NCBI RefSeq assembly: GCF_031769215.1
Contig: NW_026781978.1
Coordinates: forward strand, 744,001 to 808,000
Direction of reading: 5' to 3'
Length of the DNA stretch: 64,000 nucleotides
From: Ylistrum balloti
Lineage: Eukaryota
Part shown: positions 16,215 through 63,235 of the stretch, piece by piece
Position numbering within the stretch: position 1 is the stretch's first letter
Layout: each line of letters starts with the position of its first letter
Position numbers and translations under genes: made by a program
Notes under the pieces: model-generated
Seen by the model: only the letters and a program-made list of their open reading frames with translations
Told to the model about the DNA's origin: nothing
Database searches by the model: none

Positions 16215-17700
16215 ACACAGTTACAGGCTGTATGGTGTCAGTGTGATTCCTTTTATACAGTTACAGGCTGTATGATATCAAAATGACACCTGTTTACAGA
16301 TACAGGCTGTATGATATCAAAATGACACCTGTTTGCAGATAAAGGCTGTATAGTATCATATTGATTCCCTTTACACAGATACAGCCTGTATGATATCAAA
16401 ATGACACCTGTTTACAGATACAGGCTGTATGATATCAAAATGACACCTGTTTGCAGATAAAGGCTGTATAGTATCATATTGATTCCCTTTACACAGATAC
16501 AGCCTGTATGATATCAAAATGACACCTGTTTACAGATACAGGCTGTATGATATCAAAATGACACCTGTTTGCAGATAAAGGCTGTATAGTATCATATTGA
16601 TTCCCTTTACACAGATACAGCCTGTATGATATCAAAATGACACCTGTTTACAGATACAGGCTGTATGATATCAAAATGACACCTGTTTACAGATACAGGC
16701 TGTATGATATCAAAATGACACCTGTTTGCAGATAAAGGCTGTATAGTATCATATTGATTCCCTTAATACAGATACAGGCTGTATGATATCAAAATGACAC
16801 CTGTTTACAGATACAGGCTGTATGATATCAAAATGACACCTGTTTGCAGATAAAGGCTGTATAGTATCATATTGATTCCCTTTACACAGATACAGGCTGT
16901 ATGATATCAAAATGACAACTGTTTACAGATACAGGCTGTATGATATCAAAATGACACCTGTTTACAGATACAGGCTGTATGATATCAAAATGACACCTGT
17001 TTACAGATACAGGCTGTATGATATCAAAATGACACCTGTTTACAGATACAGGCTGTATAGTATCATATTGATTCCCTTTACACAGATACAGCCTGTATGA
17101 TATCAAAATGACACCTGTTTACAGATACAGGCTGTATGATATCAAAATGACACCTGTTTGCAGATAAAGGCTGTATAGTATCATATTGATTCCCTTTACA
17201 CAGATACAGGCTGTATGATATCAAAATGACACCTGTTTACAGATAAAGGCTGTATGATATCAAAATGACACCTGTTTACAGATACAGGCTGTATGATATC
17301 AAAATGACACCTGTTTGCAGATAAAGGCTGTATAGTATCATATTGATTCCCTTTACACAGATACAGGCTGTATGATATCAAAATGACACCTGTTTACAGA
17401 TACAGGCTGTATGATATCAAAATGACACCTGTTTACAGATACAGGCTGTATGATATCAAAATGACACCTGTTTACAGATAAAGGCTGTATAGTATCATAT
17501 TGATTCCCTTAATACAGATACAGGCTGTATGATATCAAAATGACACCTGTTTACAGATACAGGCTGTATGATATCAAAATGACACCTGTTTACAGATACA
17601 GGCTGTATAGTATCATATCGATTCCCTTTACACAGATACAGGCTGTATGACATCAACATCAGTTTACAAACACAGGCTGTATGGTGTCAAAATGGTTCCC
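16215..17700. repeat. 39/40-bp minisatellite with ~118-bp higher-order unit (~38 monomers)
   Basis: A: acagatacaggctgtatgatatcaaaatgacacctgttt; B: (g)cagataaaggctgtatagtatcatattgattccctttac; AAB/AAAB order. Confidence 0.95.
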
Positions 17701-38000: not shown

Positions 38001-41000
38001 AGGTGTCACTGGACCACGTGATGATCCCTTACATGAAAACAATGGGTAAATGGATGGACAAAGTAATGATTACTTACGCAGGTGTGTTACCGGACCAGGT
38101 GATGATCCCATACAAGAAAACAATGACACCAACCACTGCTGCGGGTAGCAGCCAAGCCGTGTAGAACCCTGTTCAATACAGTTATTTTACAGGTAAAGTT
38201 TGGATCATTTGCATCATAAAAACACTTACAGGTTTAGATTTTCTACAAAATAAAGACTAATATTGTTCTTCTTCCAAACATTTCTATGTCATTCCTAATG
38301 CATTAGAAGAAGTACAACATCTCAATTTTATTTCTGACCAAAGAAACTTCTCAAAAAGTTTTTGTATTTTTTTTTTAATTATTTGTTTTTTGTTATATTT
38401 TTTTATATAAGATCATGGAATCAGATAAATGGAATGATTTGTGAACAGGTTTACCTAGCCAAGCAAAGTAGATTCCAATCTTTTCTCCAAAGTACTCGCG
38501 AATGTGGTCAAGTGGCTGATATTTATACCACACACCCCATCGGGCCCAGTAATGGTACAACACCTGTCGGGCACTAAGCGACTCTGGTGATACAAAGTGT
38601 TTGGGCACCTCAAACGGTCCCTGAAACATAAATGGTTTTACATGTATTATTGTATAGTTGCATACTGGCACAATCAATTAATTTAATCAATAAATTACTC
38701 TTTATCATGAAGAAAAATTTCAAAATATTAATCTTAAATATCATGGTAGAAACAAAATATATGGTTCACTTAAGAATTGATTTTAGAATGATGTACGACA
38801 CTGTAATGAGTTTAGTGAAATTTTGAATCTTTGAAGAAATTAAAGACTTTCAATCCAATGTGAAGCCATGCTTGCCATTAGGGTTTGAAGTAATTGTCTA
38901 TCTATCATGTCAAACATATTTCTGGAAAAATAAGAATTTGTTACAGAGTAAATTTGAGGAACTATAACTATGGCAAGAAATACAAGCTAAGAAAAATGAT
39001 AATTCTGCAAATATGAAAAAAAAAACAAACAAAACACACCCTATAACAAAAATTAGATCATATTGATTTTGTATACTGACATCATGTAAGGGATAGGCTG
39101 CTTTGAATACATCTTCTTCCAACAGTCTGTCGATACCAATTTCTGCTCGCTTCCGTTTGCCATATGACGTGCGGCCAAGGACCTCATTGACTACTCGAGT
39201 CCTCTGGGTGTTTGAGAAGTAAGTTTCTTGGTTATCACTCCCAAGGAACCTATGAAAAATATGTATATTGATGAAATGGATGTCCCAGAATGCTTCATTC
39301 AGGGTCAGTGTAAGCCAAATAAGATGGAATATAGTAACCTTCACAACTATTGGAATGAAATCAAATAAGATGCAAATTTTTACTTCATTGTGTAAATGAT
39401 GATCCTGTTGCAAACAACTCAATGTGTTTAGATATATCTATGTCTTGTGAATGAAATTTTGTTGTAAAGTCATCATAGAAATGTTGACTTTAACAGGGAG
39501 TCTCAGTATTGCCCATCACACATTGATTCTTTTAACAGTATTTATTCAAACACAATAGACAATTTTAAAATTACTTTATGTACACATAAATTCAATTCCA
39601 ATATTCCAAGATGTTAATTAAACATAAAGATGATGATGAAAACGAGATTCAAGAGGACAACTCACCTGTCAAGCTTGGATTTCTTGAACACACAGGTGTA
39701 ATAGTCTAAGGGAGCGTTGGGTACATGTGCACTCATCATGTTTGGTATCTTAAGTATGGTAAGCACCTTGTCAGACCAATTGTCTGATGGGTTAGGGTGA
39801 GCCTGAAATATAGAATAAAACATCATACAGCTTGTGTATACTTTACATGCATATAGTGACCAGCTGTCAGGTCTGAAATTTTGAATCTATTCCTGTCTAA
39901 CTTGTGTATAGTGAACTGAGTTAGGTCTGAAATATAGTATCTAATCTTATCTAACCTTTGTATAGTGGACAGTTCTCAGGTCTGAAATATAGTATCTAAT
40001 CTTATCTAACCTTTGTATAGTGGACAGTTCTCAGGTCTGAAATATAGCATCTAATCTTATCCAACCTTTGTATAGTGGACAGTTCTCAGGTCTGAAATAT
40101 AGTATCTAATCTTATCCAACCTTTGTATAGTGGACAGTTCTCAGGTCTGAAATATAGTATCTAATCTTATCCAACCTTTGTATAGTGGACAGTTCTCAGG
40201 TCTGAAATATAGTATCTAATCTTATCCAACCTTTGTATAGTGGACAGTTCTCAGGTCTGAAATATAGTATCTAATCTTATCCAACCTTTGTATAGTGGAC
40301 AGTTCTCAGGTCTGAAATATAGTATCTAATCTTATCCAACCTTTGTATAGTGGACAGTTCTCAGGTCTGAAATATAGTATCTAATCTTATCCAACCTTTG
40401 TATAGTGGACAGTTCTCAGGTCTGAAATATAGTATCTAATCTTATCCAACCTTTGTATAGTGGACAGTTCTCAGGTCTGAAATATAGTATCTAATCTTAT
40501 CTAACCTTTGTATAGTGGACAGTTCTCAGGTCTGATTTCTAGGATCTAACCCATCAAACCTGAGAATTGTAACCAGTTGTTGATGGTCTGTGACAAGACT
40601 AAAATATGAAATTTCATCCATCAAACCTGTGCACTGTGACCAGTTGTCAATGTGTAAGGACGGGCCTGAAAAAATAGCATGTTCTTATCTAGCCTCTGTA
40701 TGGTGACCAATTGTTGATGAGTTAGGGTGGGCCTGAAATAGAGCTGAATCTCATCTTAACTGTGTATTTTGACTAGTTGTTGATGGGGTAGGTTTGCCCT
40801 TTAATGTAGAATCTGATCTCATCTAGCCTGCATATAGTGGACAATTGTTGATAGGTTAGACTAGGGACTGAAATCTAACTTCATCTTATCTAAATAAAGT
40901 GCCCATTTGTAAGGTCGGAAATAAAAAATCTAATCTTATCTAACCTTATTTATTTTTTAATTTGTTTTTTATGCACTACCTGACAAGACTCACAAGAAAT

Positions 41001-44000: not shown

Positions 44001-47000
44001 TATTTAAAACTCATTCATAGGGGAAGGGAATCGCCTTACTTTAAAAACTAACAACTCCAGTTGAAAATCAATAACTACATCATAACACTGCCTGTACTTA
44101 ATGATTTTATGAAACCATTTGTTGCCTATGCTTCAGAAACATCACCTCCTTGATGTTATTAAGTATTCTAATGGTATGTATAATGCACAGTAATGTGATT
44201 CTGAATCATTGAATAAATAATTGAGATACTGATTAAATTCAGCATTCAGCTGTTCACATACAATGCCTATTCTTATTTCAATACTGCATATTACTGGGAG
44301 GACAGATCTTATCAGCTTTCAGCAGGTGGACTGAAAGATAATTATCCAATGAAATCAGCTTGATCATGTTTAGAAGTACAATGTGTATCAAACAAAATAA
44401 TATACAATTATAGCCACAAACAACATCTTTATCTTCTGCAATTCTACCTATAAATATCACCCTCATCATCTACAGTTCTACCCACAATCAACACCCTTAT
44501 CATCTACAATCCTACCCACAATCAACACCCTCATCATCTACAGTTCTACCCACAATCAACACCCTCATCATCTACAATCTTACCCACAATCAACACCCTT
44601 ATCATCTACAATTCTACCCACAATCAACACCCTCATCATCTACAGTTCTATCCACAATCAACACCCTCATCATCTACAGTTCTACCTACAATCATCACCC
44701 TCATTATCTACAATCCTACCCACAATCAACACCCTCATCATCTACAATCCTACCCACAACCAACACCCTCATCATCTACAATCCTACTCACAATCAACAC
44801 CCTCATCATCTACAATCCTACCCACAATCATCACCCTTATCATCTACAGTTCTATCCACAATCATCACCAACATCATCTACAAACCTACCCACAAACAAC
44901 ACCCTTATCATCTACAGTGCTACCCACAATCAACACCCTCATCATCTACAATCCTACCCACAACCAACACCCTCATCATCTACAATCCTACCCACAACCA
45001 ACACCCTCATCATCTACAGTTCTACCCACAACCAACACCCTCATCATCTACAATCCTACCCACAATCAACACCCTCATCATCTACAATCCTCCCCACAAT
45101 CAACACCCTCATCATCTACAATCATACCCACAATCAACACCCTCATCATCTACAATCCTCCCCACAATCAACACCCTCATCATCTACAGTTCTATCCACA
45201 ATCATTACCCTCTTTATTTATCAAACTTAACTAAAGTCAATACCCTCATGATCTGTCAACTACTTCCGATCATCAAATATAAAGAATTCATATTCAGAAT
45301 GTGATCTTGACCTTTGACTGATGAATTTCACACTTAAACACCTTCAGAATGCTTCAAAGATAAGCATTTGTGTGCAGAATAACAAAAAAGAAAAAAAAAA
45401 AAAAGAGAGATATCCATAATGAAATCCTAGAATGATGACCAAAAGGTATGACAAACTGAAGAACAAACAGAAGGACAGACAGAACAAAACATAACATCCC
45501 CTGCACAGGTTTTTTGGAAATGTAATCAATAAACTTTTTCTCTTACACAAACTGTACAATTTGCTGATTCACCAGATCCAACTACATGTCTAAAGCAGAA
45601 GAACAGGTCTATTAACATACTAATTAACACTGTGCAGGTTTTCCAGTGATTCCTCTCCAACAGTAGCAGTTATTTATGTCTACGTGGTACATGTACTTTA
45701 CGATACATGCATTCAATTATTGATACTGTATATTAGGCCTCATCGCCAATGATGCTTGACTAAGTTTGTGTTCAATACAGATAACTACAGTTCATCTGTG
45801 ACTTTGGGCAATTCATACTGATAACACTAGCTCAACTGTGATTCATTACACTTATTTACTATATTCATTTTTCAATAAGCATTAGGCATATAGGTTGGTG
45901 GTGGGTTGGTGGTGGGTAGATGATGGGTGGGGGTGGGATGAGAGGATGGGAGATGACAGGTGGGGGCAGGGAATGGTAATACATAAAGTCCCATTCTTTA
46001 TAACAGATGAATGACATAGTATCCGGTAGCATGCTGAAATTCTATTTATAGACATGTGTGGGCTTATTACTATAAAGCATGGACTTATTGCTAAGTGAAC
46101 ACTACCTGAAATTCTCATGTAAGAATCAAACAAAATCATAACTATATGAATGTAGTATACTTCTCTTTCTACTATAATAATAATAACAATTCCTGAAAAC
46201 ACCCTTACTAGCAAGCTACACCTACTATTAAGGCTAGAGGCTGCTTGTAAAAAACCCATAACATTTCTATATTAAGACACTATCCAGATATAGTTAATAA
46301 TTGAATTTTGGATGGATTTTGTCGACCATCTCCATTTTCCACTAGTCCTAATTACAGATTGCCAAGCTGTAGACACATTTGACATTTACAGTATGAAATA
46401 ATAATGGCAATTACCCTACAGGCAATAGGACCATTTAGATTAACTGCCAGTTACAGTGTAAACACAGAGTATTAAAACTGGTCTGAGGCTCTATGGCATT
46501 TCATCAGTGCCTGATTCTGACCATGTTAATAATAGGCCTTGTAGAATTCGTCAATGGTAATGATTCTACATTGAAACAAGGAGTCTTGTAGGTCTGGTCA
46601 ATGGCTATACTGTATGAAGCATAAGGTCTGGAAGGCCTCAGTGATACAATATTAAAGCGAGATCATGAGGTCAGGTGGTAAATGACTTGATTGAAACATC
46701 AGATATTGAGGGTCTTGAGGGCCTCAGTGACAATATATTAAAATGTCGAGTCTGCAGGGCCTCAATGACACAATAATGAAGCATCAAGTCTAGAGGGACT
46801 GGTCAACGAATATATCATTGAATTGAAACTTGAGGGCATGGCCAATGAATATATATTGAAACTTAACATCTTGAGGGCCTTAGTGACACTATATTGAAAC
46901 ATCAAGTCTCAAGGGCGTCAAAGACACTATTGAAACATAAGGTCTTGAGGGCATGGCCAATGAATGTATATTGAAACTTTAGATCTTGAGGGCCTTAGTG

Positions 47001-47906: not shown

Positions 47907-48214
47907 TATGGTAATGAGGTTAGAAGATCAGGGAACCCTCAGTCACCTTGCCCTGGTAGAAAATACAGACAGTTATAACACAACAAAGCATGGTTCACAT
48001 GACAGTTCATACAGTGTACACAATTTATCTAAGTTAAGAGAGCATCAACATCCTGGCGAGCTGTGATCAGAATGATGACCGATGGCTTAGTCTAAACACT
48101 GAAACCATAAAGATACTACAGATACCAGATGTTGCTGTTTCATTAAAGTTTTTTCTGATAGTCGCATGTCTATATGTAGCTTTGATGATTAAAGTTGGGT
48201 ACCCATCATAGATT

Positions 48215-49545
48215 TCTACCAGTAGACTGACAGACCGTGGTAATGTGAAAGGTTACTACTGGTAGACTGACAGACCAAGGTAATGTGAAAGATTATTACT
48301 GGTAGACTGACAGACCATGGTAATGTGAAAGATTACTACTGGTAGACTGACAGTCCATGGTTATGTGAAAGAATTCTACTGGCAGACTGACAGACCAAGG
48401 CTTTGTGAAAGATTTCTACTAGCAGACTGACAGACCAAGGCTTTGTGAAAGATTTCTACTAGTAGACTGACAGACCAAGGCTTCGTGAAAGATTTCTACT
48501 AGTAGACTAACAGACCAAGGCTTTGTGAAAGATTTCTACTAGTAGACAGACAGACCATGGTCATGTGAAAGATTTCTACTGGTAGACTAACAGACCAAGG
48601 TAATGTGAAAGATTTCTACTAGTAGACTGACAGACCATGGTCATGTGAAAGATCACTACTGGTAGACTGACAGACCAAGGCTTTGTGAAAGATTTCTACT
48701 AGCAGACTGACAGACCAAGGCAATGTGAAAGATTTCTACTGGTAGACTGACAGACCAAGGTAATGTGAAAGATTTCTACTGGTAGACTGACAGACCATGG
48801 TAATGTGAAAGATTACTACTGATAGACAGACAGACCAAGGCTTCGTGAAAGATTTCTACTGGTAGACTGACAGACCAAGGTAATGTGAAAGATTACTACT
48901 GGTAGACTGACAGACCAAGGCTTCGTGAAAGATTTCTACTGGTAGACTGACAGACCAAGGTAATGTGAAAGATTACTACTGGTAGACTGACAGACCAAGG
49001 CTTTGTGAAAGATTTCTACTAGCAGACTGACAGACCAAGGCTTTGTGAAAGATTTCTACTAGTAGACTGACAGACCAAGGCTTCGTGAAAGATTTCTACT
49101 AGTAGACTAACAGACCAAGGCTTTGTGAAAGATTTCTACTAGTAGACTGACAGACCATGGTCATGTGAAAGATTTCTACTGGTAGACTGACAGACCAAGG
49201 TAATGTGAAAGATTTCTACTAGCAGACTGACAGACCAAGGTAATGTGAAAGATTTCTACTAGTAGACTGACAGACCATGGTCATGTGAAAGATTACTACT
49301 GGTAGACTGACAGACCAAGGCTTTGTGAAAGATTTCTACTAGCAGACTGACAGACCAAGGCTTTGTGAAAGATTTCTACTAGTAGACTGACAGACCATGG
49401 TCATGTGAAAGATTTCTACTAGTAGACTGACAGACCATGGTCATGTGAAAGATTTCTACTAGTAGACTGACAGACCAAGGCTTTGTGAAAGATTTCTACT
49501 AGTAGACTGACAGACCATGGTCATGTGAAAGATTTCTACTGGTAA
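48215..49545. repeat. 40-bp minisatellite (~33 copies)
   Basis: ctactggtagactgacagaccaaggtaatgtgaaagattt. Confidence 0.95.
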
Positions 49546-54094: not shown

Positions 54095-55149
54095 TTTGTC
54101 AGTATACTGTAACCTGGTATACAAACACACCTGCAAGTAATCAATTAATTTGTCAGTATATTGTAACCTAGTGTACAAAGACACCTCATATGAATCCAAT
54201 AATTTGTCAGTATACTGTACCCTAGTGTACAAAGACATCTCTGCAGAATCAATTAATTCATCAGTATATTGTAACCTAGTGTACAAAGACACCTCGTATG
54301 AATCCAAAAATTTGTCAGTATACTGTACCCTAGTGTACAAAGACACCTCTGATCAATCTAATACATTATATGTAATTTGTCAGTATACAGTAACCTAGTG
54401 TACAGACACCTCGTATGAATCTATTATTTTGTCAGTATACTGTAACCTAGTGTACAGACACCTCGTATGAATCTATTATTTTGTCAGTATACTGTAACCT
54501 AGTGTACAGACACCTCGTATGAATCTATTATTTTGTCAGTATACTGTAACCTAGTGTACAGACACCTCGTATGAATCTATTATTTTGTCAGTATACTGTA
54601 ACCTAGTGTACAGACACCTCTAATGAATCTATTATTTTGTCAGTATACTGTAACCTAGTGTACAGACACCTCGTATGAATCTATTATTTTGTCAGTATAC
54701 AGTAACCTAGTGTACAGACACCTCGTATGAATCTATTAATTTGTCAGTATACTGTAACCTAGTGTACAGACACCTCGTATGAATCTATTAATTTGTCAGT
54801 ATACTGTAACCTAGTGTACAGACACCTCGTATGAATCTATTATTTTGTCAGTATACAGTAACCTAGTGTACAGACACCTCGTATGAATCTATTAATTTGT
54901 CAGTATACTGTAACCTAGTGTACAGACACCTCGTATGAATCTATTATTTTGTCAGTATACAGTAACCTAGTGTACAGACACCTCGTATGAATCTATTAAT
55001 TTGTCAGTATACTGTAACCTAGTGTACAGACATCTCGTATGAATCTACTAATTTGTCAATATACTGTAACCTAGTGTACAGACACCTCGTATGAATCTAT
55101 TAATTTGTCAGTATACTGTAACCTAGTGTACAGACACCTTGTATGAATC
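54095..55149. repeat. 52-54-bp minisatellite, left part (~20 copies), interrupted by the gypsy element
   Basis: ttgtcagtatactgtaacctagtgtacagacacctcgtatgaatctattatt. Confidence 0.95.
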
Positions 55150-56082
55150 TGTGACGATTTTATTCAGTTAGAGTTATCTCCCTTCATGTAACGTTTTGTA
55201 TACGTCCTGTTTTGTATCATTCCCCACCTACCTAATTATTTTAATTATCGATGATTGACTTATGTTTTCATGAAACTAGTGTTTACTAAATGTGTAATCA
55301 TACCTGTATAAATAAATAAAAACATTTGTCTTGCGTATTTGTGGGTTTTGGTGCTGTATTAATTGAGAAGGAAAATACTGGAGACACCCAGAATAATACA
55401 TAAGATTTTATGTAAATACTGGTTGAAACCAGTAAACAAAAAAGAAGATTTTGACAGACGGAAGAAGGTCGGCTATATCACAGGTAATAAAGTATTATAG
55501 CACACAGTTCAATTATACTGTTACCAGAAGCTCCTGAGTAAGGGGTTGCCTGAATAAGGCAGCTCTGGTAACAGTTATTGTTACGTGTGGTCGGTGCCAG
55601 TACGTTGACGTGTCAGGTACGCCAGAATCTCCTGAAAAGGGGTTGCCTGCAAAGGCTACTCTGGTACGCCTGACTACTGATACAGTACTTGGCACAACAC
55701 TTTGTACTGTGATAATAACAGGACACTGGCAGGCGACGTCGGAGCTGTACGGTGGTCGGCTCAGTAATAAGGGACGTGCTTGCAGTGTTGTAGTGCTGAC
55801 AGTCTGTTAGTGTTGCGGTGTGTGGTAGCCTTGTTGGGCAACATACGCCTAGGCGACGTGATACGTACCGCGGACACATTGTTGGCTCGTGTATGGTGAC
55901 ATGGTGGACAGAGGTACTGTCCTTCTCTGTTGTAGTGTATAGATATATTGTTTATTAAATTGAGTAATTGTTCAACTGCTCAGCCAGGTAGCTGAGGAAT
56001 TCCAATCGCTTCCGGAGCAGGTAGCTCTGTCTAAATTGAGAGACCCGGCGTGCACGCGCGCTACCATAGGGTGCACGTTACA
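55150..56082 (+). repeat. 5' LTR (933 bp)
   Basis: TGTGACG...CGTTACA; direct repeat of 62212-63144 at offset 7062; no difference seen by eye; ORF track gives identical translations for both copies. Confidence 0.97.
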
Positions 56083-56088
56083 TTTTAA

Positions 56089-56106
56089 TGGTGGCAGCGG
56101 TGGGAT
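56089..56106 (+). promoter_or_regulatory. Primer-binding site complementary to the tRNA-Leu 3' end
   Basis: TGGTGGCAGCGGTGGGAT is the reverse complement of ATCCCACCGCTGCCA+CCA, the 3' end of animal tRNA-Leu(AAG/TAG type); lies 6 nt after the LTR end. Confidence 0.9.
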
Positions 56107-56151
56107 CATAGTTGAACATAGCTATTGTTATTTTTTTTGTATTAACTTGCA

Positions 56152-59100
56152 ATGGAGGATATCAACAAGACCATAGAGGAGCTGGAGGCCCGCATCGCAT
56201 CATATGGTGTAGGACAGAAACCAGGAGATGGTCCAGCCAGGCACTCGACTCCGAGGAGTACTACCACGGTGGTATTAGACGAGAAAAACACAGCTGACTC
56301 CGGGATAGTGACTGTGCGCAGTTCAGATGTTGATTCTGGTGGTGGTCTGGGGCAGAGTTCGAAGGATGCTGCTGACCTACATACTAAGCTTGTACAGTTT
56401 AGCCCGCAGACACCAGACATGGACAGATACGGAAATAATACTGGCGACGGGTTGTCACAGGAGCGACAAGGTCCCTTGTCCGATCACTACTGGCAAGAAT
56501 CTGTATCTAGTAAACCACTGAGTCGACCAAAGTATTGGTATGATGACGGGACATACCAACCGCGCAGCAAGTGTTCAGACACAAACGAAGCAAAGACCAG
56601 GCGAACACCATCATTTAATATCAAGCCTGCAACCTACGACGGCAGTGGGTCATGGTTGGACTACAAGGCCCATTTTGAATCGTGTGCTGCATTGGCAAAT
56701 TGGACCGAGGAGGAGAAGGGGTTGTACTTAGCTGTTTCCCTCAGGGGCCAGGCACAAGGAGTACTCGGTAACCTCCCAGGTGGACCATTGAAGAAATATA
56801 GGGACCTGGTATATGTTCTCAGTGAACGGTTTGCTCCACCAAACCAGACTGAACTCTATCGTGCGCAGCTACGAGAAAAGCGGCAAAAGGCGACCGAGTC
56901 ATTACCGGAGCTGGGACAAAGTATACGGAGGCTAGCGAATCAAGCATACCCGACCGCACCATCCGATGTCATTGAGGTACTAGCAAAAGAACAGTTCATT
57001 GACGCCTTGATAGACTCGGACATGAGATTGCGGATTAAACAAGCCAGACCAGCTAGTCTCAATGAAGCTATACGCCATGCCGTTGAATTGGAGGCCTTCA
57101 TCAAGTCAGACCAGAAACACAGGGAGTCGCAAGGGTTCTTAAGGCCCATAGCTCAGAAGGAGGCTAATGACCAAGAAACTGATCAGGGAATGAAAGCATT
57201 GACTGCAGTTATGACTGAGATACAAGAATCCCTGGCAGGCCTAAAGACCCAAGTAGCAGACTTGGAGTCTAAACAGCGCAATTGGCGACCAGCACCTAAA
57301 TTCCGTAACAAAGGTACTGACGGTAAATGTTTCAATTGTGGTGAAAAAGGCCATTTTCAAAGGAATTGCCCGGAGACGAGAAAGGATAACCAGCAAGGTA
57401 ATAAGAAAGGAAAAGCCAATGGTGCGAAAAAGAAAGAGCAAGCTGGTGTGAATAGACAAGCTGGGGAGCCAGGAATTTATGTTAATGTGGAGATCCATGG
57501 AGTAAAAGGAAAATTTCTAGTGGACACGGGGTCGACTTTGTCGCTGGTATCTGAATGTTTGTTCACGGCAATATGCAGTCGAGATAGGTATCAGCATCCC
57601 TTGACAAAGGTGCCCCGCGACATTTTGTCTGCGAATGGAGAACCACTGATAGTAAGCGGTCATACAGTGTTACCAGTATTAATTGATAACCACTTGTACA
57701 AGAAGGGACTGGTGGTAGCCAGACTATCAGTAGACGGAGTCCTTGGGTTGGACTTCATGAACGAGGAAAAATGCGTTGTCGATGTGGTGAAACGGAAACT
57801 CGCAATTGGACAGCAGGAGGTTGAGTTGCTCAGTGAGGGAAGAATAGGTTGTTATCGTGTGGCTGTTGCTGATACTCTTAACATCCCCCCAGAATCTGAG
57901 ATGGTTACCTATGGACAGGTCATTCTTCCTCCTGGTACCGCTGTGCCCAAGGGTGTTAGCATTATCGAACCTGCACCAAAATTCCTGGATACTGATCGAG
58001 CTTTGGTAGGAAAGACTTTGGTCAGCAATAGTGAAACAGTCCCATTGCGAATTATGAATGTATCTCCAGATGTGAAAGTGGTGCATGCAGGGACGGTTGT
58101 GGGGTCTCTCACACCGATAGACAGTGTTATGTCTTGTGAAACAACCAGCAAAGAAAAAGAGGCTCTAACTCCGGTACTTCAAGATCTGTTAGACAGGACC
58201 AGTGAAGGGCTAACTAGAAATCAAGTGAAGCAGGTACGCGCATTGTTAGTTCGACATTCCAATGCCTTTGCAAAGGATAATCAAGACATTGGAAAAACCG
58301 GTGTCGTGAAACATTCAATCAGCGTTGGTGATCATCCACCGGTAAAACAACCCCTTCGGAGGCTTCCGGTTCATGCAAAACAAGCCGTAGACGAGCATAT
58401 TGATGATATGTTGGACAGGGGGATAATCGAACCTTCAACTAGTCCTTGGTCGTCTGGTGTCGTCCTCGTAAAGAAGAAGGATGGGAGTACCAGATTTTGT
58501 GTGGACTACCGGCGCCTTAATGACGCAACCATCAAAGACGCTTACCCTTTACCAAGGATTGATGAATCCCTTGACCAGCTGTCTGGAGCATGCTGGTTCT
58601 CTACCCTCGATTTGTGCTCCGGATATTGGCAAGTCGAGCTGGAGGAGGGAGATAAACCAAAAACTGCTTTTTCGACCAAACGTGGCCTTTATCAATTCAA
58701 GGTAATGCCGTTCGGGCTGTGCAACGCCCCGGCTACGTTTGAAAGGCTGATGGAAACCGTGTTGCGGGGACTGCAGTGGGACATCTGCCTCATATACCTT
58801 GACGATGTGATTGTCACTGGGAGAACTTTTGGAGAAATGTTAAGCAATCTGGAGAAGGTACTTCAGCGTTTGTCAGCTGCCGGTTTAAAACTAAAAGCGA
58901 AAAAGTGTACGCTGTGTGCTAGAAATGTTGAGTTCCTTGGACATATTATTTCGCCTGAAGGAGTTTCCACAGACCCTGGCAAGATACAACTAGTGAAGGA
59001 TTGGCCAGAACCAACAACTGTAACTGAGGTCCGATCATTTCTTGGACTGTGCGGCTATTACAGGCGGTTCGTCAAGGACTTCTCTGCCATCGCCAAACCA

Positions 59101-61239
59101 TTACATCGGCTTACAGAAAAACACAAACGTTTCATATGGACTAAAGAGTGCCAAGAAGCCTTTGATTGCCTCAAAGCAAAGCTGTGCCAGTCCCCGATAT
59201 TGGCATACCCAGACTTCACTAAACCATTTGTGCTCGACACAGATGCAAGTGACCTTGCTATAGGAGGTGTACTTGCCCAAGTCCAGGATGGACACGAGAG
59301 AGTTATTGCATACGCAGGTCGAACACTGTCAAAGTCAGAGAGGAAATACTGTGTTACAAGGAAAGAGTTGCTCGCCGTTGTCTTCTTTGTCAAGTATTTC
59401 CGCCATTACTTGTATGGAAAACATTTTCTCCTTCGTACAGATCACAGTTCCCTGCGTTGGCTCCTAAATTTCAAGAACCCAGAGGGCCAACTTGCAAGAT
59501 GGTTGGAAGTTCTGAGCATGTATGACATGAAAATCGAACATCGACCAGGATCCCAACACTCAAATGCAGACGCACTTAGTAGGCGACCTTGTCGGAAGTG
59601 TAAGTTCAATCCTGAATGGGACAAGGTAACAAAACTGTCTGTTGGTGGCTTGACAGAGACTGGGTCTAGCAAACAAGAAGAGTCCGACAGGCAACAAATT
59701 GAAACCGGGGGAAAATCCTTGTCAATGCTCCAGAAAGAGGATCCAGATATTATGTTAGTTAAGAAGTGGGTAGAAGACACTACCAAACCAAACACCAAAG
59801 ACGTGCACATGGGTGGTGTAATGGTGAAGTCCCTTTGGTCACAACGGGATATGTTGATAGTCGCGAATGACATACTGTACCGCAAATGGCAAGACTCTAA
59901 AGGCAAAACGTTGCAAGCGGTTGTACCAATGACTGAGCGAAGGAGCATATTGAAGATGTGTCATGATCATCGGACCTCTGGTCATCTGGGAGTAAAGAAG
60001 ACCTTGAGCAAGGTAAGACAAAGCTTCTTCTGGCCTGGTCTACAGAGAGATGTGAGACAATATATAGCAGGCTGTGAAGTGTGCTCAAGAAAAAAAGGGC
60101 CGATGAAAACTCCGAAAGCACCTATGCAAGTAGTTGGTGCCGGTATGCCCATGGAAAGGATAGCAACCGACATACTTGGAGATTTGCCATTGACTAGCAA
60201 AGGGAATCGTTATGTATTAGTAGTGTCTGACTATTTTACGAAATGGACTGAGGCATTTCCAATGCCAGACATGACTGCAGGGACCGTGGCTGATATCATT
60301 GTTAGAGAGGTTGTCACTAGGTTTGGCGTACCAACGGTGATACACTCGGATCAGGGAAAACAGTTTGAGGGACAACTCTTCTCACAAATGTGCGAGGTAT
60401 TGCACATCAAAAAGACTCGAACCACTCCCTACCATCCGGAGGGAGATGGTATGGTTGAGCGGTTCAATCGTACGCTGATTTCCATGCTGGCTTCCTACGT
60501 CAATGACCACCACACGGACTGGGATGACCATCTGCCTTTTGTTACTATGGCATATAGATCTGCAGTTCACGAAACTACTGGCAGTAGCCCTAACGCCCTT
60601 ATGCTTGGTAGGGAAGTATCAACGCCACTGGACATTATGTATGAGCTACCCCAAAACGCAAAGAAAATTCCAACAAACCAATGGGCTTGGGACCTAAAGG
60701 AAAAAATGGAGACAGCTCATGCTCATGTCAGAAAGCATACAAATGCAGAAATGCTACGACAAAAGATCTGGCACGACCAAAAGCTCAGCTGGCAAACCTT
60801 CTCGGCTGGAGACCAGGTCTATGTTTACTTCCCGAGGTATCTACCAGGCCGTTCTTCAAAACTTACAAGTTATTGGAGAGGACCATTTGAGGTAGTAAGC
60901 AGATGTTCAGATGTCACCTACAAGGTACTGTGTGGGACTCGCGGTGCACCACAAATAGTTCATGTAGATCGCATGCAACTGAAGAAAAGACAAGAGCTAA
61001 CAGGCGAGCAAACATCGGACACAGGACCGATGAAAGGTACCTCAGAACCTAAGGAGGGGGAGGTCAAAGACACAGGACAAGGTCCCCAAACTGTTAGGGA
61101 TGATATCATACCCCGTACCTCTGGGGATGATTGTGAAATCGTCGAGGCGAGTGAGGGCGAATGGGGAAACCCATTCACGTCCCGACGTACGAGACGGCCA
61201 CCCCGCTGGCTGGCCGAATATGTTACTAATTTTGATTAG
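56152..61239 (+). CDS. gag-pol: Gag-Pol polyprotein (capsid, CCHC knuckle, aspartic protease, RT, RNase H, integrase), 1695 aa, single uninterrupted frame
   Basis: Gag KPATYDGSGSW...; CFNCGEKGHFQRNC; PR LVDTGS; RT FCVDYRRLN and YLDD; RH LDTDASD; IN HHCC (HDHRTSGHLG...CEVC), DILG / HSDQG / VERFNRT, and GPY/F (WRGPF); no chromodomain seen. Confidence 0.97.
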   Translation: MEDINKTIEELEARIASYGVGQKPGDGPARHSTPRSTTTVVLDEKNTADSGIVTVRSSDVDSGGGLGQSSKDAADLHTKLVQFSPQTPDMDRYGNNTGDGLSQERQGPLSDHYWQESVSSKPLSRPKYWYDDGTYQPRSKCSDTNEAKTRRTPSFNIKPATYDGSGSWLDYKAHFESCAALANWTEEEKGLYLAVSLRGQAQGVLGNLPGGPLKKYRDLVYVLSERFAPPNQTELYRAQLREKRQKATESLPELGQSIRRLANQAYPTAPSDVIEVLAKEQFIDALIDSDMRLRIKQARPASLNEAIRHAVELEAFIKSDQKHRESQGFLRPIAQKEANDQETDQGMKALTAVMTEIQESLAGLKTQVADLESKQRNWRPAPKFRNKGTDGKCFNCGEKGHFQRNCPETRKDNQQGNKKGKANGAKKKEQAGVNRQAGEPGIYVNVEIHGVKGKFLVDTGSTLSLVSECLFTAICSRDRYQHPLTKVPRDILSANGEPLIVSGHTVLPVLIDNHLYKKGLVVARLSVDGVLGLDFMNEEKCVVDVVKRKLAIGQQEVELLSEGRIGCYRVAVADTLNIPPESEMVTYGQVILPPGTAVPKGVSIIEPAPKFLDTDRALVGKTLVSNSETVPLRIMNVSPDVKVVHAGTVVGSLTPIDSVMSCETTSKEKEALTPVLQDLLDRTSEGLTRNQVKQVRALLVRHSNAFAKDNQDIGKTGVVKHSISVGDHPPVKQPLRRLPVHAKQAVDEHIDDMLDRGIIEPSTSPWSSGVVLVKKKDGSTRFCVDYRRLNDATIKDAYPLPRIDESLDQLSGACWFSTLDLCSGYWQVELEEGDKPKTAFSTKRGLYQFKVMPFGLCNAPATFERLMETVLRGLQWDICLIYLDDVIVTGRTFGEMLSNLEKVLQRLSAAGLKLKAKKCTLCARNVEFLGHIISPEGVSTDPGKIQLVKDWPEPTTVTEVRSFLGLCGYYRRFVKDFSAIAKPLHRLTEKHKRFIWTKECQEAFDCLKAKLCQSPILAYPDFTKPFVLDTDASDLAIGGVLAQVQDGHERVIAYAGRTLSKSERKYCVTRKELLAVVFFVKYFRHYLYGKHFLLRTDHSSLRWLLNFKNPEGQLARWLEVLSMYDMKIEHRPGSQHSNADALSRRPCRKCKFNPEWDKVTKLSVGGLTETGSSKQEESDRQQIETGGKSLSMLQKEDPDIMLVKKWVEDTTKPNTKDVHMGGVMVKSLWSQRDMLIVANDILYRKWQDSKGKTLQAVVPMTERRSILKMCHDHRTSGHLGVKKTLSKVRQSFFWPGLQRDVRQYIAGCEVCSRKKGPMKTPKAPMQVVGAGMPMERIATDILGDLPLTSKGNRYVLVVSDYFTKWTEAFPMPDMTAGTVADIIVREVVTRFGVPTVIHSDQGKQFEGQLFSQMCEVLHIKKTRTTPYHPEGDGMVERFNRTLISMLASYVNDHHTDWDDHLPFVTMAYRSAVHETTGSSPNALMLGREVSTPLDIMYELPQNAKKIPTNQWAWDLKEKMETAHAHVRKHTNAEMLRQKIWHDQKLSWQTFSAGDQVYVYFPRYLPGRSSKLTSYWRGPFEVVSRCSDVTYKVLCGTRGAPQIVHVDRMQLKKRQELTGEQTSDTGPMKGTSEPKEGEVKDTGQGPQTVRDDIIPRTSGDDCEIVEASEGEWGNPFTSRRTRRPPRWLAEYVTNFD

Positions 61240-61340
61240 TTAGAGTACCAATAGTATTCTTGTATTCCTGATTTTGTAAGTTGTGAACCATTTTCATACA
61301 TCATCTGAATCCTTTCTTCCCTTTTTTGTATGTTGTAGAG

Positions 61341-62057
61341 ATGGTGAAGACAAAGACCACTCACAGGAAGGAACAGAAATGTCCCATGTGTGCATTCACT
61401 AGTGTAGATATTGAAAGGATGAAGGAGCATATTCTCATGTGTGGTCTGAAGGAAATGGAGAAGAAATCCTTCGTATGTGAAGAATGCCCATTTGCTACCA
61501 CCTCGGCAAGCAATCTTCTCCGGCACACGAAGAGAAGACACAGTGTAGAACAGACGGCACAGCCGGGACCCTCACGTGAAGGAGGTAGCTATTCTACAGT
61601 GAGAGAGGAGGAAGACTCGTGGAAAGACAATGACCCTGGTGATCTTGCTAGCATCCTAGGTGATGTGTCGGACTCTGACAATGGGGAAGACCATGATGAG
61701 TCTGCTGCTGGCGAGGAACCTGATGTAGAGGCCATCCCTGATCCAACGGTGAGGAAGCATACACGGCCAGATCAAGTGTTCACCCCTAAACGGGCGCCAG
61801 AGAAATTGAGTCCCAAGGATCCCAGGAATTGTATCCCACAGAAAGTCCCAAGGGTAGAGAGGCCTCCTACCAATCTCCATCAGGTTCCTAGGGTGTCAAA
61901 GGCGATGGCGAGTGTGTCTACTCAGACAAAGCCAGTTATAGAGAGGCATGTGGTCTGGAAAACGACAAGGTACACAGAAGGAGATAGGGAAATCGAGCTG
62001 GTTGAGATGCATGAGACGGAGACCTCCTGTGGTGTATGCGGACTGTTAGATGATTGA
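61341..62057 (+). CDS. Retrotransposon accessory ORF2: C2HC + C2H2 zinc-finger protein with acidic region and TQT motif (238 aa from ATG 61341)
   Basis: Open frame between the pol stop and the PPT; C-x2-C-x12-H-x3-C (CPMC...HILMC) and C-x2-C-x12-H-x4-H (CEEC...HTKRRH); the ORF track starts it at TTG 61326, first ATG is 61341. Confidence 0.82.
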   Translation: MVKTKTTHRKEQKCPMCAFTSVDIERMKEHILMCGLKEMEKKSFVCEECPFATTSASNLLRHTKRRHSVEQTAQPGPSREGGSYSTVREEEDSWKDNDPGDLASILGDVSDSDNGEDHDESAAGEEPDVEAIPDPTVRKHTRPDQVFTPKRAPEKLSPKDPRNCIPQKVPRVERPPTNLHQVPRVSKAMASVSTQTKPVIERHVVWKTTRYTEGDREIELVEMHETETSCGVCGLLDD

Positions 62058-62198
62058 AGAAATGTGGACGGAAGTGTTTGTGTCCTTCAGACCTACTGAA
62101 AGTTGTACTTTTATTACATATTGGAGACTGTTAGTGTGATCATCGGTGTTTTAGATAGTCTTTAAATGTTCTATTTGTCATGCGGGACGCATCGACTT

Positions 62199-62211
62199 AA
62201 GGAGGGGGAAG
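62199..62211 (+). promoter_or_regulatory. Polypurine tract
   Basis: AAGGAGGGGGAAG abutting the TG of the 3' LTR. Confidence 0.9.
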
Positions 62212-63144
62212 TGTGACGATTTTATTCAGTTAGAGTTATCTCCCTTCATGTAACGTTTTGTATACGTCCTGTTTTGTATCATTCCCCACCTACCTAATTA
62301 TTTTAATTATCGATGATTGACTTATGTTTTCATGAAACTAGTGTTTACTAAATGTGTAATCATACCTGTATAAATAAATAAAAACATTTGTCTTGCGTAT
62401 TTGTGGGTTTTGGTGCTGTATTAATTGAGAAGGAAAATACTGGAGACACCCAGAATAATACATAAGATTTTATGTAAATACTGGTTGAAACCAGTAAACA
62501 AAAAAGAAGATTTTGACAGACGGAAGAAGGTCGGCTATATCACAGGTAATAAAGTATTATAGCACACAGTTCAATTATACTGTTACCAGAAGCTCCTGAG
62601 TAAGGGGTTGCCTGAATAAGGCAGCTCTGGTAACAGTTATTGTTACGTGTGGTCGGTGCCAGTACGTTGACGTGTCAGGTACGCCAGAATCTCCTGAAAA
62701 GGGGTTGCCTGCAAAGGCTACTCTGGTACGCCTGACTACTGATACAGTACTTGGCACAACACTTTGTACTGTGATAATAACAGGACACTGGCAGGCGACG
62801 TCGGAGCTGTACGGTGGTCGGCTCAGTAATAAGGGACGTGCTTGCAGTGTTGTAGTGCTGACAGTCTGTTAGTGTTGCGGTGTGTGGTAGCCTTGTTGGG
62901 CAACATACGCCTAGGCGACGTGATACGTACCGCGGACACATTGTTGGCTCGTGTATGGTGACATGGTGGACAGAGGTACTGTCCTTCTCTGTTGTAGTGT
63001 ATAGATATATTGTTTATTAAATTGAGTAATTGTTCAACTGCTCAGCCAGGTAGCTGAGGAATTCCAATCGCTTCCGGAGCAGGTAGCTCTGTCTAAATTG
63101 AGAGACCCGGCGTGCACGCGCGCTACCATAGGGTGCACGTTACA
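62212..63144 (+). repeat. 3' LTR (933 bp)
   Basis: Same sequence as the 5' LTR; directly preceded by the PPT. Confidence 0.97.
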
Positions 63145-63235
63145 AATCTATTATTTTGTCAGTATATTGTACCCAAATGTACAAAGACACCTCTGCAGAA
63201 TCAATTAATTTGTCAGTATATTGTAACCAAGTGTA
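63145..63235. repeat. Right-hand continuation of the 52-54-bp minisatellite
   Basis: aatctattattttgtcagtatattgtacccaaatgtacaaagacacc resumes the unit exactly at the TSD. Confidence 0.9.

What the first reader, a model, noticed from the sequence alone, without database searches (positions are those of the whole stretch)
55517..55674. Twin three-way-junction RNA motifs with GNRA/GNRNA loops duplicated inside the LTR
Seen: two copies of the core CCAGA-N2-CTCCT-[loop]-AGGGG-T-TGCCT-[loop]-AGGC-N3-TCTGG, at 55517-55575 and 55612-55674 (and again at +7062 in the 3' LTR). The stems are conserved while the four loops differ (GAGUA and GAAUA in copy 1; GAAA and GCAA in copy 2), yet all fit GNRA or GNRNA. 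The closing stems have different sequences but both pair: ACTGTTACCAGA/TCTGGTAACAGT (12 bp) and GTCAGG..CCAGA/TCTGG..CCTGAC. G-U pairs and GNRA identity work only on the + (genomic RNA) strand. Established: GNRA loops mediate tertiary docking; GNRNA pentaloops (lambda boxB) bind Arg-rich peptides; retroviral packaging signals often use paired hairpins. Inference: a selected cis-acting RNA element (Psi/dimerisation, IRES domain, or binding site for Gag-NC or the ORF2 zinc fingers), possibly forming an ORF2-plus-RNA-element regulatory pair.
Basis: partly seen in the sequence, partly recalled or inferred. Interest (0 to 1): 0.75.

Follow-up and report, generated by a model that had tools for sequence, protein, structure and literature searches.

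The report
Twin RNA hairpin module in LTR
A young Ty3/gypsy retrotransposon, probably in a scallop genome, carries in each long terminal repeat two copies of a small RNA fold that together display four near-identical hairpins; this is probably a docking platform for handling its genomic RNA, but it could not be tested against relatives here.

Summary
Each 933-bp LTR of an uninterrupted 7,995-bp Ty3/gypsy element (55150-63144) holds two modules, at 55517-55575 and 55612-55674. Each has a closing helix and two short hairpins with GNRA or GNR(N)A loops.

- **Fold:** both modules fold this way alone and within 241-1,087-nt contexts.
- **Variation:** 7 of 8 core differences between the copies lie in unpaired positions (p=0.003). 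The eighth turns A-U into G-U.
- **Outer helices:** they are unrelated in sequence, yet both pair.
- **Strand:** four G-U pairs and the loop identities exist only on the + strand.
- **New evidence:** ATG is the most depleted of all 64 trinucleotides from about 55338 to the gag start (4 seen, 15.8 expected), on the + strand only. This puts the motif in a scanned 5' leader downstream of a TATA box and argues against an IRES.
- **Known families:** no Rfam family, tRNA or ribozyme matches.
- **ORF2:** it is conserved in four scallop genera, but its fingers resemble DNA-binding C2H2 fingers and nothing ties it to the motif.

Best reading: a selected cis-acting RNA platform in the genomic-RNA leader, with the exact role unresolved. 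I left out the covariation test in related LTRs, because I could not tell whether fetching relatives is barred.

The parts
55150..63144 (+). Whole LTR retrotransposon (7,995 bp), Ty3/gypsy type. The reading frames are uninterrupted as they stand. It is flanked by the 4-bp target duplication AATC (55146-55149 and 63145-63148) and sits inside a 52-bp minisatellite.
55150..56082 (+). 5' LTR, 933 bp, with TG..CA ends. The first ~340 nt are AT-rich (27-33% GC) and the rest is ~41-61% GC.
62212..63144 (+). 3' LTR, 100% identical to the 5' LTR. It carries the same two modules at 62579-62637 and 62674-62736.
55517..55575 (+). Module 1. Closing helix of 12 bp (55517-55528 with 55564-55575). Hairpin A at 55531-55545 (5 bp including one U-G, loop GAGUA). 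Hairpin B at 55548-55560 (4 bp, loop GAAUA; a fifth pair is possible with 55547/55561).
   Evidence: pair probabilities 0.65-0.97
55612..55674 (+). Module 2. Outer helix of 7 bp (55612-55618 with 55668-55674, one U-G), a 2x2 internal loop, then an inner helix of 6 bp (55621-55626 with 55660-55665, one G-U). Hairpin A at 55629-55642 (loop GAAA). Hairpin B at 55645-55656 (loop GCAA).
   Evidence: pair probabilities 0.90-0.99
55594..55695 (+). Longer irregular stem that carries module 2 at its tip in the predicted folds.
55307..55313 (+). TATA-box-like site. It predicts a transcription start near 55338.
   Evidence: pattern match only; supported indirectly
55338..56151 (+). ATG-poor stretch, inferred to be the 5' leader (R plus U5, PBS and spacer). 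It has 4 ATG against 15.8 expected, and none between 55411 and 55892.
55486..55491 (+). AATAAA hexamer. If it is the poly(A) signal, R ends near 55505 and both modules open U5. The other candidate is ATTAAA at 55954-55959, which would put the modules in R.
   Evidence: pattern match only
56089..56107 (+). Primer-binding-site-like stretch. It starts with TGG, 6 nt after the LTR.
   Evidence: read from the sequence; the tRNA was not identified
56152..61239 (+). Gag-Pol ORF, 1,695 aa with no stops. Domains in order: one CCHC knuckle (aa 393), aspartic protease, RT, RNase H, integrase.
61341..62057 (+). ORF2, 238 aa, with two C2H2-like fingers (aa 14-34 and 46-67). A pyrimidine tract plus AG ending at 61338 precedes it and looks like a splice acceptor.
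62199..62211 (+). Polypurine tract abutting the 3' LTR.

Best explanation
The two modules are a selected, independently folding RNA domain in the 5' untranslated leader of the element's genomic, gag-pol RNA. They lie in R or, more likely, at the start of U5.

Each module is a three-way junction that holds out two short hairpins with the same apex, CCU-GNR(N)A-AGG. The leader therefore shows four near-identical GNRA-type hairpins mounted on two stable stems. I read this as a multivalent docking platform that marks and organises the full-length RNA. The most likely use is recognition of the genomic RNA for packaging or assembly by Gag. A second possibility is RNA-RNA tertiary or dimer contacts.

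Shown here:
- the fold and its robustness to context;
- the restriction of variation to unpaired positions;
- the + strand polarity;
- a position inside an ATG-depleted leader.

Inferred only:
- that selection acts on the structure rather than on the sequence;
- the identity of the partner;
- the step of the life cycle.
For: - **Fold:** it is returned for each copy alone and in 241-, 656- and 823-nt contexts. Helix pair probabilities are 0.65-0.99 in five contexts, including the 3'-UTR context.
- **Variation between the copies:** 29 of 30 paired core positions are identical. The one change is A-U to G-U. In contrast, 7 of 18 unpaired positions differ (Fisher p=0.0026).
- **Outer helices:** they have unrelated sequences yet pair in both copies. 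Seven extra Watson-Crick pairs arise by chance with probability of about 6e-5 per copy (my calculation).
- **Shared apex:** all four hairpins share CCUG-N2-3-AAGG. Eight of the 11 window matches are in the LTRs, against 2.4 expected for the whole window.
- **Strand:** there are four G-U pairs, which would be A-C mismatches on the other strand. The - strand loses the two hairpins.
- **Leader:** ATG is the most depleted of 64 trinucleotides in 55338-56151 (4 vs 15.8; 0 of 2000 shuffles as low). CAT is not depleted, and ATG is not depleted upstream of 55337.
- **Room for signals:** only about 45 nt separate the PBS from the gag AUG. Leader signals must therefore lie in the LTR part or in gag.
- **Precedent:** the cis-acting sequences of Ty1 and Ty3 map to the RNA ends, and the Ty1 5' end is compactly folded (PMC4974528).
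Against: - There is no comparison with related LTRs, so there is no true covariation test. Two paralogous copies in one element share history.
- The invariant stems could be conserved for their sequence, for example as DNA or protein-binding sites, rather than for pairing.
- GNRA-type loops are not the usual retroviral nucleocapsid targets, which favour exposed unpaired G (my knowledge, not tested).
- No loop is self-complementary, so a kissing dimer is unlikely.
- z-scores are about equal on both strands. Several other 75-nt windows of the element are similarly structured: module 1 ranks 3rd of 466 and module 2 lower.
- The transcription start, poly(A) site and splice sites are pattern matches only.
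- An AT-rich island at 55935-55975, with a TATA-like site and ATTAAA, allows a layout in which the motif lies in U3. The ATG depletion argues against that layout.
Confidence: 0.45

Rival explanations
1. By-product without a function of its own. A hairpin was duplicated twice (A to B, then module 1 to module 2). The inverted flanks arose from a palindrome-generating copying error such as template switching during reverse transcription. The pattern 'stems conserved, loops variable' would then reflect higher mutability of unpaired positions.
For: - Hairpins A and B resemble each other, and so do modules 1 and 2. Serial duplication is therefore evident.
- The whole leader is highly structured anyway (z -7.1 for 656 nt; -4.0).
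- Similar z-scores occur elsewhere in the element.
- Only one family member was examined.
Against: - The flanks have diverged beyond alignment, while 29 of 30 paired core positions are unchanged. That is hard to obtain by drift.
- The changes include transversions and indels, yet all four loops keep the G..A frame.
- Both outer helices pair although their sequences differ.
Confidence: 0.2
2. DNA-level element. The two ~47-bp repeats are tandem enhancer-type or protein-binding repeats in the LTR. They would be read as double-stranded DNA by host factors or by the element's own two-finger ORF2 protein, as in transactivator-responsive LTR repeats.
For: - A 13-bp block is perfectly conserved in both copies (55540-55552 and 55637-55649).
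- The ORF2 fingers are closest to DNA-binding C2H2 fingers (CTCF E=1e-7, PRDM9, BCL11A).
- ORF2 is conserved over its full length in four scallop genera.
- Tandem repeats are common in LTR promoters (my knowledge).
Against: - It does not explain why the conserved blocks are mutually complementary in three nested helices.
- It does not explain why the non-homologous flanks pair in both copies.
- It does not explain why the loop length changes (5 vs 4 nt) while the G..A frame is kept.
- The ATG depletion places the repeats downstream of the start site.
Confidence: 0.13
3. Accessory-protein response element. The platform is bound, directly or through a host factor, by the spliced-mRNA product ORF2 to export or stabilise the unspliced RNA. 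This would work like HIV Rev with its RRE, or like CERV of the C. elegans element Cer1.
For: - ORF2 is a conserved accessory gene with an acceptor-like site just before its ATG.
- A donor-like site at 55481 lies upstream of the modules. If it is used, the modules would be present only in unspliced RNA.
- Cer1 shows that a Ty3/gypsy element can need such a protein for export of its genomic RNA (PMC10309623).
Against: - No splice junction has been observed. Three other donor-like sites lie within or downstream of the modules.
- The fingers look DNA-binding, and there is no arginine-rich motif.
- Nothing links ORF2 to these hairpins.
Confidence: 0.1
4. Poly(A)-site architecture. Module 1 starts about 20 nt after the AATAAA at 55486. 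Its fold would bring the GU-rich stretch at 55576-55597 next to the cleavage site, or would mask or unmask the site differently at the two RNA ends.
For: - The positions of AATAAA, module 1 and the GU-rich stretch.
- A structure that bridges a poly(A) signal and its cleavage site is known in HTLV-type LTRs (my knowledge).
Against: - It does not explain module 2 or the uniform GNRA-type loops.
- The poly(A) site is only a pattern match.
- ATTAAA at 55954 is an alternative signal.
Confidence: 0.07
5. Captured small RNA or ribozyme: a tRNA-, 5S- or SRP-derived piece as in the Cassandra, Helenus and Ajax elements, or a three-way-junction ribozyme as in retrozymes.
For: LTRs that carry small-RNA-derived sequence exist, including in bivalves (PMC10886601).
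Against: - ARAGORN finds no tRNA in the window.
- No Rfam family reaches its gathering score in the window.
- No plausible match appears at E<=10 in the LTR or in the 211-nt motif region.
Confidence: 0.02

Closest known systems
Retroviral and retrotransposon leader signals (Psi/encapsidation and dimer-linkage domains; cis-acting ends of Ty1/Ty3 RNA)
   Same: - Structured, non-coding and + strand.
- Located in the 5' leader of the full-length RNA.
- Built from paired short hairpins on a common stem.
- The element encodes a Gag with one CCHC knuckle, as Ty3 does (PMC4974528).
   Different: - It lies 410-570 nt upstream of the PBS, inside the LTR, rather than between the PBS and gag.
- The loops are GNRA-type rather than G-rich single-stranded or palindromic.
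- It is an exact tandem pair of three-way junctions.
- No binding or packaging data exist.
Gammaretroviral 'double hairpin' of Psi and the three-way-junction core of avian Psi (from my knowledge; no sequences were fetched or compared)
   Same: Two adjacent short hairpins with tetraloops of the same kind, or a junction with short hairpins, used for Gag recognition.
   Different: - There is no sequence relation, and none was tested.
- Here the unit is duplicated, and the loops tolerate both 4 and 5 nt.
Phage lambda boxB / N-peptide type GNRNA pentaloop hairpins
   Same: - The module 1 loops fit GNRNA on 4-5-bp stems.
- The equivalence of the pentaloops (module 1) and tetraloops (module 2) is what a GNRA-like fold with one extruded base would allow.
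   Different: - No arginine-rich peptide partner is found in Gag-Pol or ORF2.
- The host is eukaryotic.
- No Rfam match.
Rev/RRE, CTE and Cer1 CERV systems for export of unspliced retroelement RNA
   Same: - An accessory ORF downstream of pol with an acceptor-like site.
- A repeated, structured RNA platform in the full-length RNA.
   Different: - The known response elements lie internally or in the 3' region and are larger.
- ORF2 is unrelated to Rev or CERV, and its fingers look DNA-binding.
- Splicing has not been shown.
Tandem enhancer or transactivator-responsive repeats in LTR U3 regions
   Same: Two ~47-bp imperfect direct repeats, 97 bp apart, in an LTR.
   Different: - The repeats are internally palindromic in three nested helices and have pairing flanks.
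- They lie downstream of the inferred start site.

Membership tests
Ty3/gypsy (Metaviridae-type) LTR retrotransposon (the host element) | Two LTRs with TG..CA ends, a target duplication, a PBS and a PPT | tested here: met
Ty3/gypsy (Metaviridae-type) LTR retrotransposon (the host element) | Domain order CCHC knuckle - protease - RT - RNase H - integrase | tested here: met
   Pfam hits in that order
Packaging/dimerisation signal (Psi-like) | Lies in the 5' leader of the full-length RNA | tested here: inconclusive
   The strand-specific ATG depletion from about 55338 to gag supports it. There is no transcript map.
Packaging/dimerisation signal (Psi-like) | Absent from spliced subgenomic RNA | tested here: inconclusive
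   Donor-like sites lie both upstream (55481) and within or downstream (55614, 55985, 56018) of the modules. No junction data.
Packaging/dimerisation signal (Psi-like) | Self-complementary loop for kissing dimerisation | tested here: not met
   The loops GAGUA, GAAUA, GAAA and GCAA are not palindromic.
Packaging/dimerisation signal (Psi-like) | Bound by Gag/NC and needed for encapsidation | not testable with these tools
   none
Conserved structured RNA family (general criterion) | Base pairs kept by compensatory changes across independent relatives | not tested
   Only the two paralogous copies were compared: 15 core pairs invariant, 1 pair A-U to G-U, and the outer helix changed on both sides but with an arbitrary alignment.
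boxB-type GNRNA hairpin with arginine-rich peptide | GNRNA pentaloop on a short stem | tested here: inconclusive
   Met in module 1 (two pentaloops). Module 2 has GNRA tetraloops.
boxB-type GNRNA hairpin with arginine-rich peptide | Arginine-rich motif in a protein of the same element | tested here: not met
   At most 5 Arg in any 15-aa window of Gag-Pol, and at most 3 in ORF2.
Known Rfam families, including hammerhead and other junction ribozymes, SRP, tRNA and 5S | Match to a curated covariance model | tested here: not met
   ARAGORN
Small-RNA-derived LTR sequence (Cassandra/Helenus/Ajax type) | tRNA- or 5S-like sequence with pol III boxes in the LTR of a short non-autonomous element | tested here: not met
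   No tRNA or 5S match. The element is autonomous-type and 8 kb long. Criteria are from PMC10886601.
Troyka lineage of scallop retroelements | LTRs of 100-400 bp and a Gag knuckle of the form CX2CX8-10HX4C | tested here: not met
   The LTR is 933 bp and the knuckle fits CX2CX4HX4C. Criteria are from PMC12440569.
Rev/RRE- or CERV-like export pair | Accessory protein made from a spliced mRNA | tested here: inconclusive
   An acceptor-like site ends at 61338, 2 nt before the ORF2 ATG. No RNA data.
Rev/RRE- or CERV-like export pair | Accessory protein binds the structured RNA element | not testable with these tools
   The fingers resemble DNA-binding C2H2 fingers.

The most novel reading that the evidence does not exclude
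A mollusc Ty3/gypsy lineage has evolved its own two-part control system. A conserved two-finger accessory protein (ORF2), made from a spliced mRNA, would recognise the four-hairpin GNRA platform that only the unspliced leader carries. That would govern export, stability or packaging of the genomic RNA. It would be an independent invention of a Rev/RRE- or CERV-like logic, built on C2H2 fingers that read RNA hairpins.
Probability: 0.08. Interest if true: 0.8.

Novelty: new member of a known kind. Interest (0 to 1): 0.45.

Why it matters
Cis-acting RNA signals are well mapped only for a few retroviruses and for yeast Ty1 and Ty3. For the very abundant LTR retrotransposons of molluscs and other invertebrates they are essentially unknown.

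This element offers a compact module of about 60 nt, sharply defined and present twice, with four uniform hairpins. It sits in a young element that also carries a conserved accessory gene. If relatives keep it, it would be a new RNA family. It would also be a convenient marker for annotating this lineage, and a starting point for asking how such elements pick out their own RNA.

The ATG-depletion signature used here is a simple way to locate the transcribed leader inside an LTR from the sequence alone.

Tried and rejected
- **Rfam:** scans at E<=10 over the LTR and over the 211-nt motif region, and at gathering score over the whole window. Only chance-level hits appeared (bacterial sRNAs, a snoRNA, a lncRNA piece).
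- **tRNA:** ARAGORN over the window found no tRNA. The primer tRNA therefore could not be named, and a tRNA-derived origin is rejected.
- **Covariance model:** R1, built from the two copies, was searched with filters off over the window. It found only the four known copies. A weak hit at 8328-8399 (-) (E about 0.03, rough) shares only the closing-helix letters and has no hairpins, so I treat it as chance.
- **blastn:** the LTR and the whole element against the window gave no solo LTR and no older copy.
- **Foldback or MITE insertion:** module 1 is flanked by TAT/TAT. However, it is only 59 bp, module 2 has no such duplication, and the flanks simply continue the stem. Rejected.
- **Strand call from z-scores:** both strands give similar z, so z cannot decide the strand. 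The call rests on the G-U pairs, the loop identity and the ATG depletion.
- **Literature:** no paper combines LTR retrotransposon, three-way junction and GNRA. Nothing was found on this scallop lineage or its ORF2.
  - a sequence was over the size limit; resent.
  - my scan timed out; rerun smaller.
  - I was one base out of frame; corrected.
Full report
**What is there**

The finding lies in the 5' LTR of a complete LTR retrotransposon at 55150-63144 on the + strand.
- The two LTRs are 933 bp, identical at every base, begin with TG and end with CA. They are flanked by a 4-bp target duplication, AATC.
- Six bases after the 5' LTR comes a primer-binding-site-like stretch that begins with TGG (56089-56107). 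A polypurine tract (62199-62211) abuts the 3' LTR.
- One uninterrupted ORF of 1,695 aa (56152-61239) carries a single CCHC knuckle, an aspartic protease, RT, RNase H and integrase. That is the Ty3/gypsy order.
- A second ORF of 238 aa (61341-62057) has two C2H2-like fingers.
- Neither reading frame has any break as it stands. The window contains no N.
- The closest polyproteins in the protein collection are 47-58% identical, and the named ones are from bivalves: Pinctada, Mytilus, Magallana and Pecten.
- ORF2 has full-length homologues in the scallops Ylistrum balloti (83%), Mizuhopecten yessoensis (64%) and Argopecten irradians (60%). The host is therefore almost certainly a scallop. The species itself was not identified.

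**Check of the observation**

- The core pattern occurs four times in the window, twice per LTR and always on the + strand. None are expected by chance.
- Each copy alone folds as a closing helix with two short hairpins: -32.5 kcal/mol (z -6.2) and -31.5 kcal/mol (z -4.4).
- The same helices appear in minimum-energy and centroid folds of 241, 656 and 823 nt.
- Their pair probabilities are 0.65-0.99 in five sequence contexts, including the 3'-UTR context of the 3' LTR.
- Module 1 has 12 contiguous Watson-Crick closing pairs. Module 2 has 7 pairs, a 2x2 internal loop, then 6 pairs. In the larger folds module 2 sits at the tip of a longer irregular stem (55594-55695).
- Hairpins A and B of module 1 have somewhat lower probabilities (0.65-0.74), because module 1 can also form one long imperfect hairpin (pair I1).

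**Is it more than chance, and is it under constraint?**

Within the 48 core columns the two copies differ at 8 positions.
- Seven of these lie among the 18 unpaired positions.
- One lies among the 30 paired positions, and it changes A-U to G-U (one-sided Fisher p=0.0026).
- The loops differ by substitutions and by one base in length, yet all four read G-N-R-(N)-A.
- The two loops within a module are of the same kind: two pentaloops in module 1 and two tetraloops in module 2.

Outside the core the flanks are unalignable, yet they form helices in both copies. Seven extra Watson-Crick pairs have a chance probability near 6e-5 (my calculation).

Eight of the 11 window matches to that pattern are the LTR hairpins, against 2.4 expected for the whole window. 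The architecture is therefore a hairpin duplicated into a pair, and the pair duplicated again.

This is good evidence that the stems are constrained. It is not a covariation test, for three reasons:
- there are only two paralogous copies;
- the core stems never vary;
- the outer-helix 'compensatory' counts depend on an arbitrary alignment.

**Strand and transcript**

- *G-U pairs.* Four of the pairs are G-U (one in module 1, three in module 2). On the - strand they become A-C mismatches, the two hairpins are lost, and the loops are no longer GNRA-type.
- *z-scores.* These do not separate the strands. The strand call rests on the G-U pairs and the loops, and on new evidence from the ATG count.
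- *ATG count.* From 55338 to the gag start (814 nt) there are only 4 ATG against 15.8 expected. None of 2,000 dinucleotide shuffles is that low, and ATG is the most depleted of all 64 trinucleotides.
- *Controls.* The reverse complement, CAT, is not depleted (8 vs 10.8). ATG is not depleted in the first 188 nt of the LTR (5 vs 4.5). No ATG at all occurs between 55411 and 55892.

Avoidance of upstream AUGs on one strand is the signature of a scanned 5' leader. It begins just downstream of the only canonical TATA box (55307).

Three things follow.
- The motif is in the + strand RNA. That had to be so in any case, because every LTR base must pass through the genomic RNA.
- The motif most likely lies in the 5' leader, about 180-340 nt from the inferred start and 480-630 nt before the gag AUG.
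- An IRES reading is unlikely.

Whether the modules are in R or in U5 depends on the poly(A) signal.
- AATAAA at 55486 would end R near 55505, so that the modules open a long U5.
- ATTAAA at 55954 would put them in R, at both ends of the RNA.

These sites, and the donor-like and acceptor-like sites, are matches to textbook consensus patterns only.

**What it is not**

- No Rfam family matches at any useful level, and there is no tRNA-like sequence. The motif is therefore not a known ribozyme, and not a captured small RNA of the kind described for the Cassandra, Helenus and Ajax LTRs (PMC10886601).
- The element is not of the Troyka lineage described from scallops (PMC12440569).
- The window holds no further copy, solo LTR or diverged relative.

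- *Gag* has one CCHC knuckle, like Ty3 (PMC4974528).
- *ORF2* is a genuine, conserved gene of this lineage. Its four homologues are 234-239 aa, and 116 columns are invariant, including the finger cysteines and histidines.
- *ORF2 fingers.* As a profile, they are closest to the DNA-binding fingers of CTCF, PRDM9 and BCL11A.
- *Arginine-rich motif.* Neither protein has one.
- *ORF2 expression.* A pyrimidine tract plus AG ends 2 nt before the ORF2 ATG, which suggests expression from a spliced RNA.

Nothing in the data connects ORF2 to the hairpins.

**How it most likely works**

I take the modules to be a selected RNA domain of the genomic-RNA leader. It is a multivalent platform of four uniform GNRA-type hairpins held on two stable stems.

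The most likely use is selection and organisation of the full-length RNA by Gag, that is, packaging or assembly. Tertiary or intermolecular RNA contacts are a second possibility. The confidence figures below are mutually exclusive readings:
- leader platform, as just described (the best explanation): 0.45. Within it, I put about 0.2 on packaging specifically;
- by-product of serial duplication: 0.2;
- DNA-level repeats: 0.13;
- ORF2- or host-mediated export element, as for Rev/RRE or the CERV protein of Cer1 (PMC10309623): 0.1;
- role in poly(A)-site architecture: 0.07;
- captured small RNA or ribozyme: 0.02.

The fold, the pattern of variation, the strand and the leader position are shown. 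Everything about partners and the life-cycle step is inference.

**Comparison with the known**

It works like the structured leader signals of retroviruses and of the yeast Ty elements. It shares their position, polarity and paired short hairpins.

It is not a member of any described family. It differs in four ways:
- it lies inside the LTR, far upstream of the PBS;
- it is an exact tandem pair of three-way junctions;
- its loops are GNRA-type and interchange between 4 and 5 nt;
- it has no palindromic loop.

Comparisons with named retroviral signals and with boxB come from my own knowledge. No such sequence was fetched, typed into a tool or compared.

Ty3/gypsy elements are formally Metaviridae, and PMC12440569 calls them a family of reverse-transcribing viruses. 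The host is an animal. It is also the most informative missing analysis.
- *Two slips.* In my private reasoning I began to write from memory a stretch of 7SL/Alu RNA, and later the letters of phage lambda boxB. I stopped each time.
These are textbook signals and not the sequence of any gene or virus.

**Verdict**

This is a real, well-defined, + strand RNA structural module, present twice per LTR. It sits in the probable 5' leader of a young scallop-type Ty3/gypsy element. It belongs to no described RNA family, and its function is plausible but unproven. It is a new member of a known kind. Interest is moderate at 0.45 and would rise if relatives show covariation or if the ORF2 link holds.

Noticed in passing
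54376-55150 and 63145 onward: The element is inserted inside a 52-bp minisatellite (14.9 copies, 96% matches). The array resumes right after the 3' LTR, and one unit is split at the AATC target duplication.
   Followed up: partly
window 6600-52200: The window holds more than 15 different minisatellite arrays with periods of 15-118 bp. Examples are 24105-26240 (29 bp x 75), 48210-49544 (40 bp x 33), 16217-17694 (39-bp-based) and 44403-45212 (34 bp x 24).
   Followed up: no
38913-39422 (-): An ORF of 170 aa matches the anoctamin dimerisation domain (Pfam PF16178, E=4e-20). It is probably an exon of a host anoctamin gene on the minus strand. It was the only host coding sequence noticed.
   Followed up: partly
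61341-62057 (+): ORF2 homologues in three other scallop genomes are annotated as host proteins, for example 'transcription factor HIVEP3-like' in Mizuhopecten. These are likely retrotransposon genes annotated as cellular genes.
   Followed up: partly
55338-56151 (+): Strand-specific ATG depletion (4 vs 15.8 expected). The remaining upstream ATGs open only very short frames of 1, 21, 13 and 7 codons. The last one lies inside the PBS-like stretch.
   Followed up: yes
55481-55491: A donor-like CAG|GTAATA overlaps the AATAAA hexamer at 55486. A splice-donor signal and a poly(A) signal would then share the same bases, about 25 nt before module 1.
   Followed up: no
55935-55975: An AT-rich island with a TATA-like run and ATTAAA lies inside the otherwise ~50% GC half of the LTR. 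It is an alternative U3/R boundary, which the ATG depletion argues against.
   Followed up: partly
55375-55449: An AT-rich stretch with two small hairpins gave the most extreme z-score of the element scan (-6.15, based on 30 shuffles). It lies between the inferred start site and the modules.
   Followed up: no
55642-55659 and 55825-55842: Hairpin B of module 2 is 78% complementary over 18 nt to a stretch 165 nt downstream that is itself a hairpin. This could be an alternative long-range pairing, or it could be chance.
   Followed up: no
55533-55545: The loop and 3' strand of hairpin A in module 1 read like a splice-donor core (GUAAG). Module 2 lacks it, so it is probably a coincidence.
   Followed up: no
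protein P0047: One related bivalve-type polyprotein (49% identity) carries a Pfam zf-C2H2_jaz (PF12171) hit within the polyprotein itself. A C2H2 finger may therefore be fused rather than separate in some relatives.
   Followed up: no
3465-4115 (-): An ORF of 217 aa has no Pfam match. It was not examined further.
   Followed up: partly
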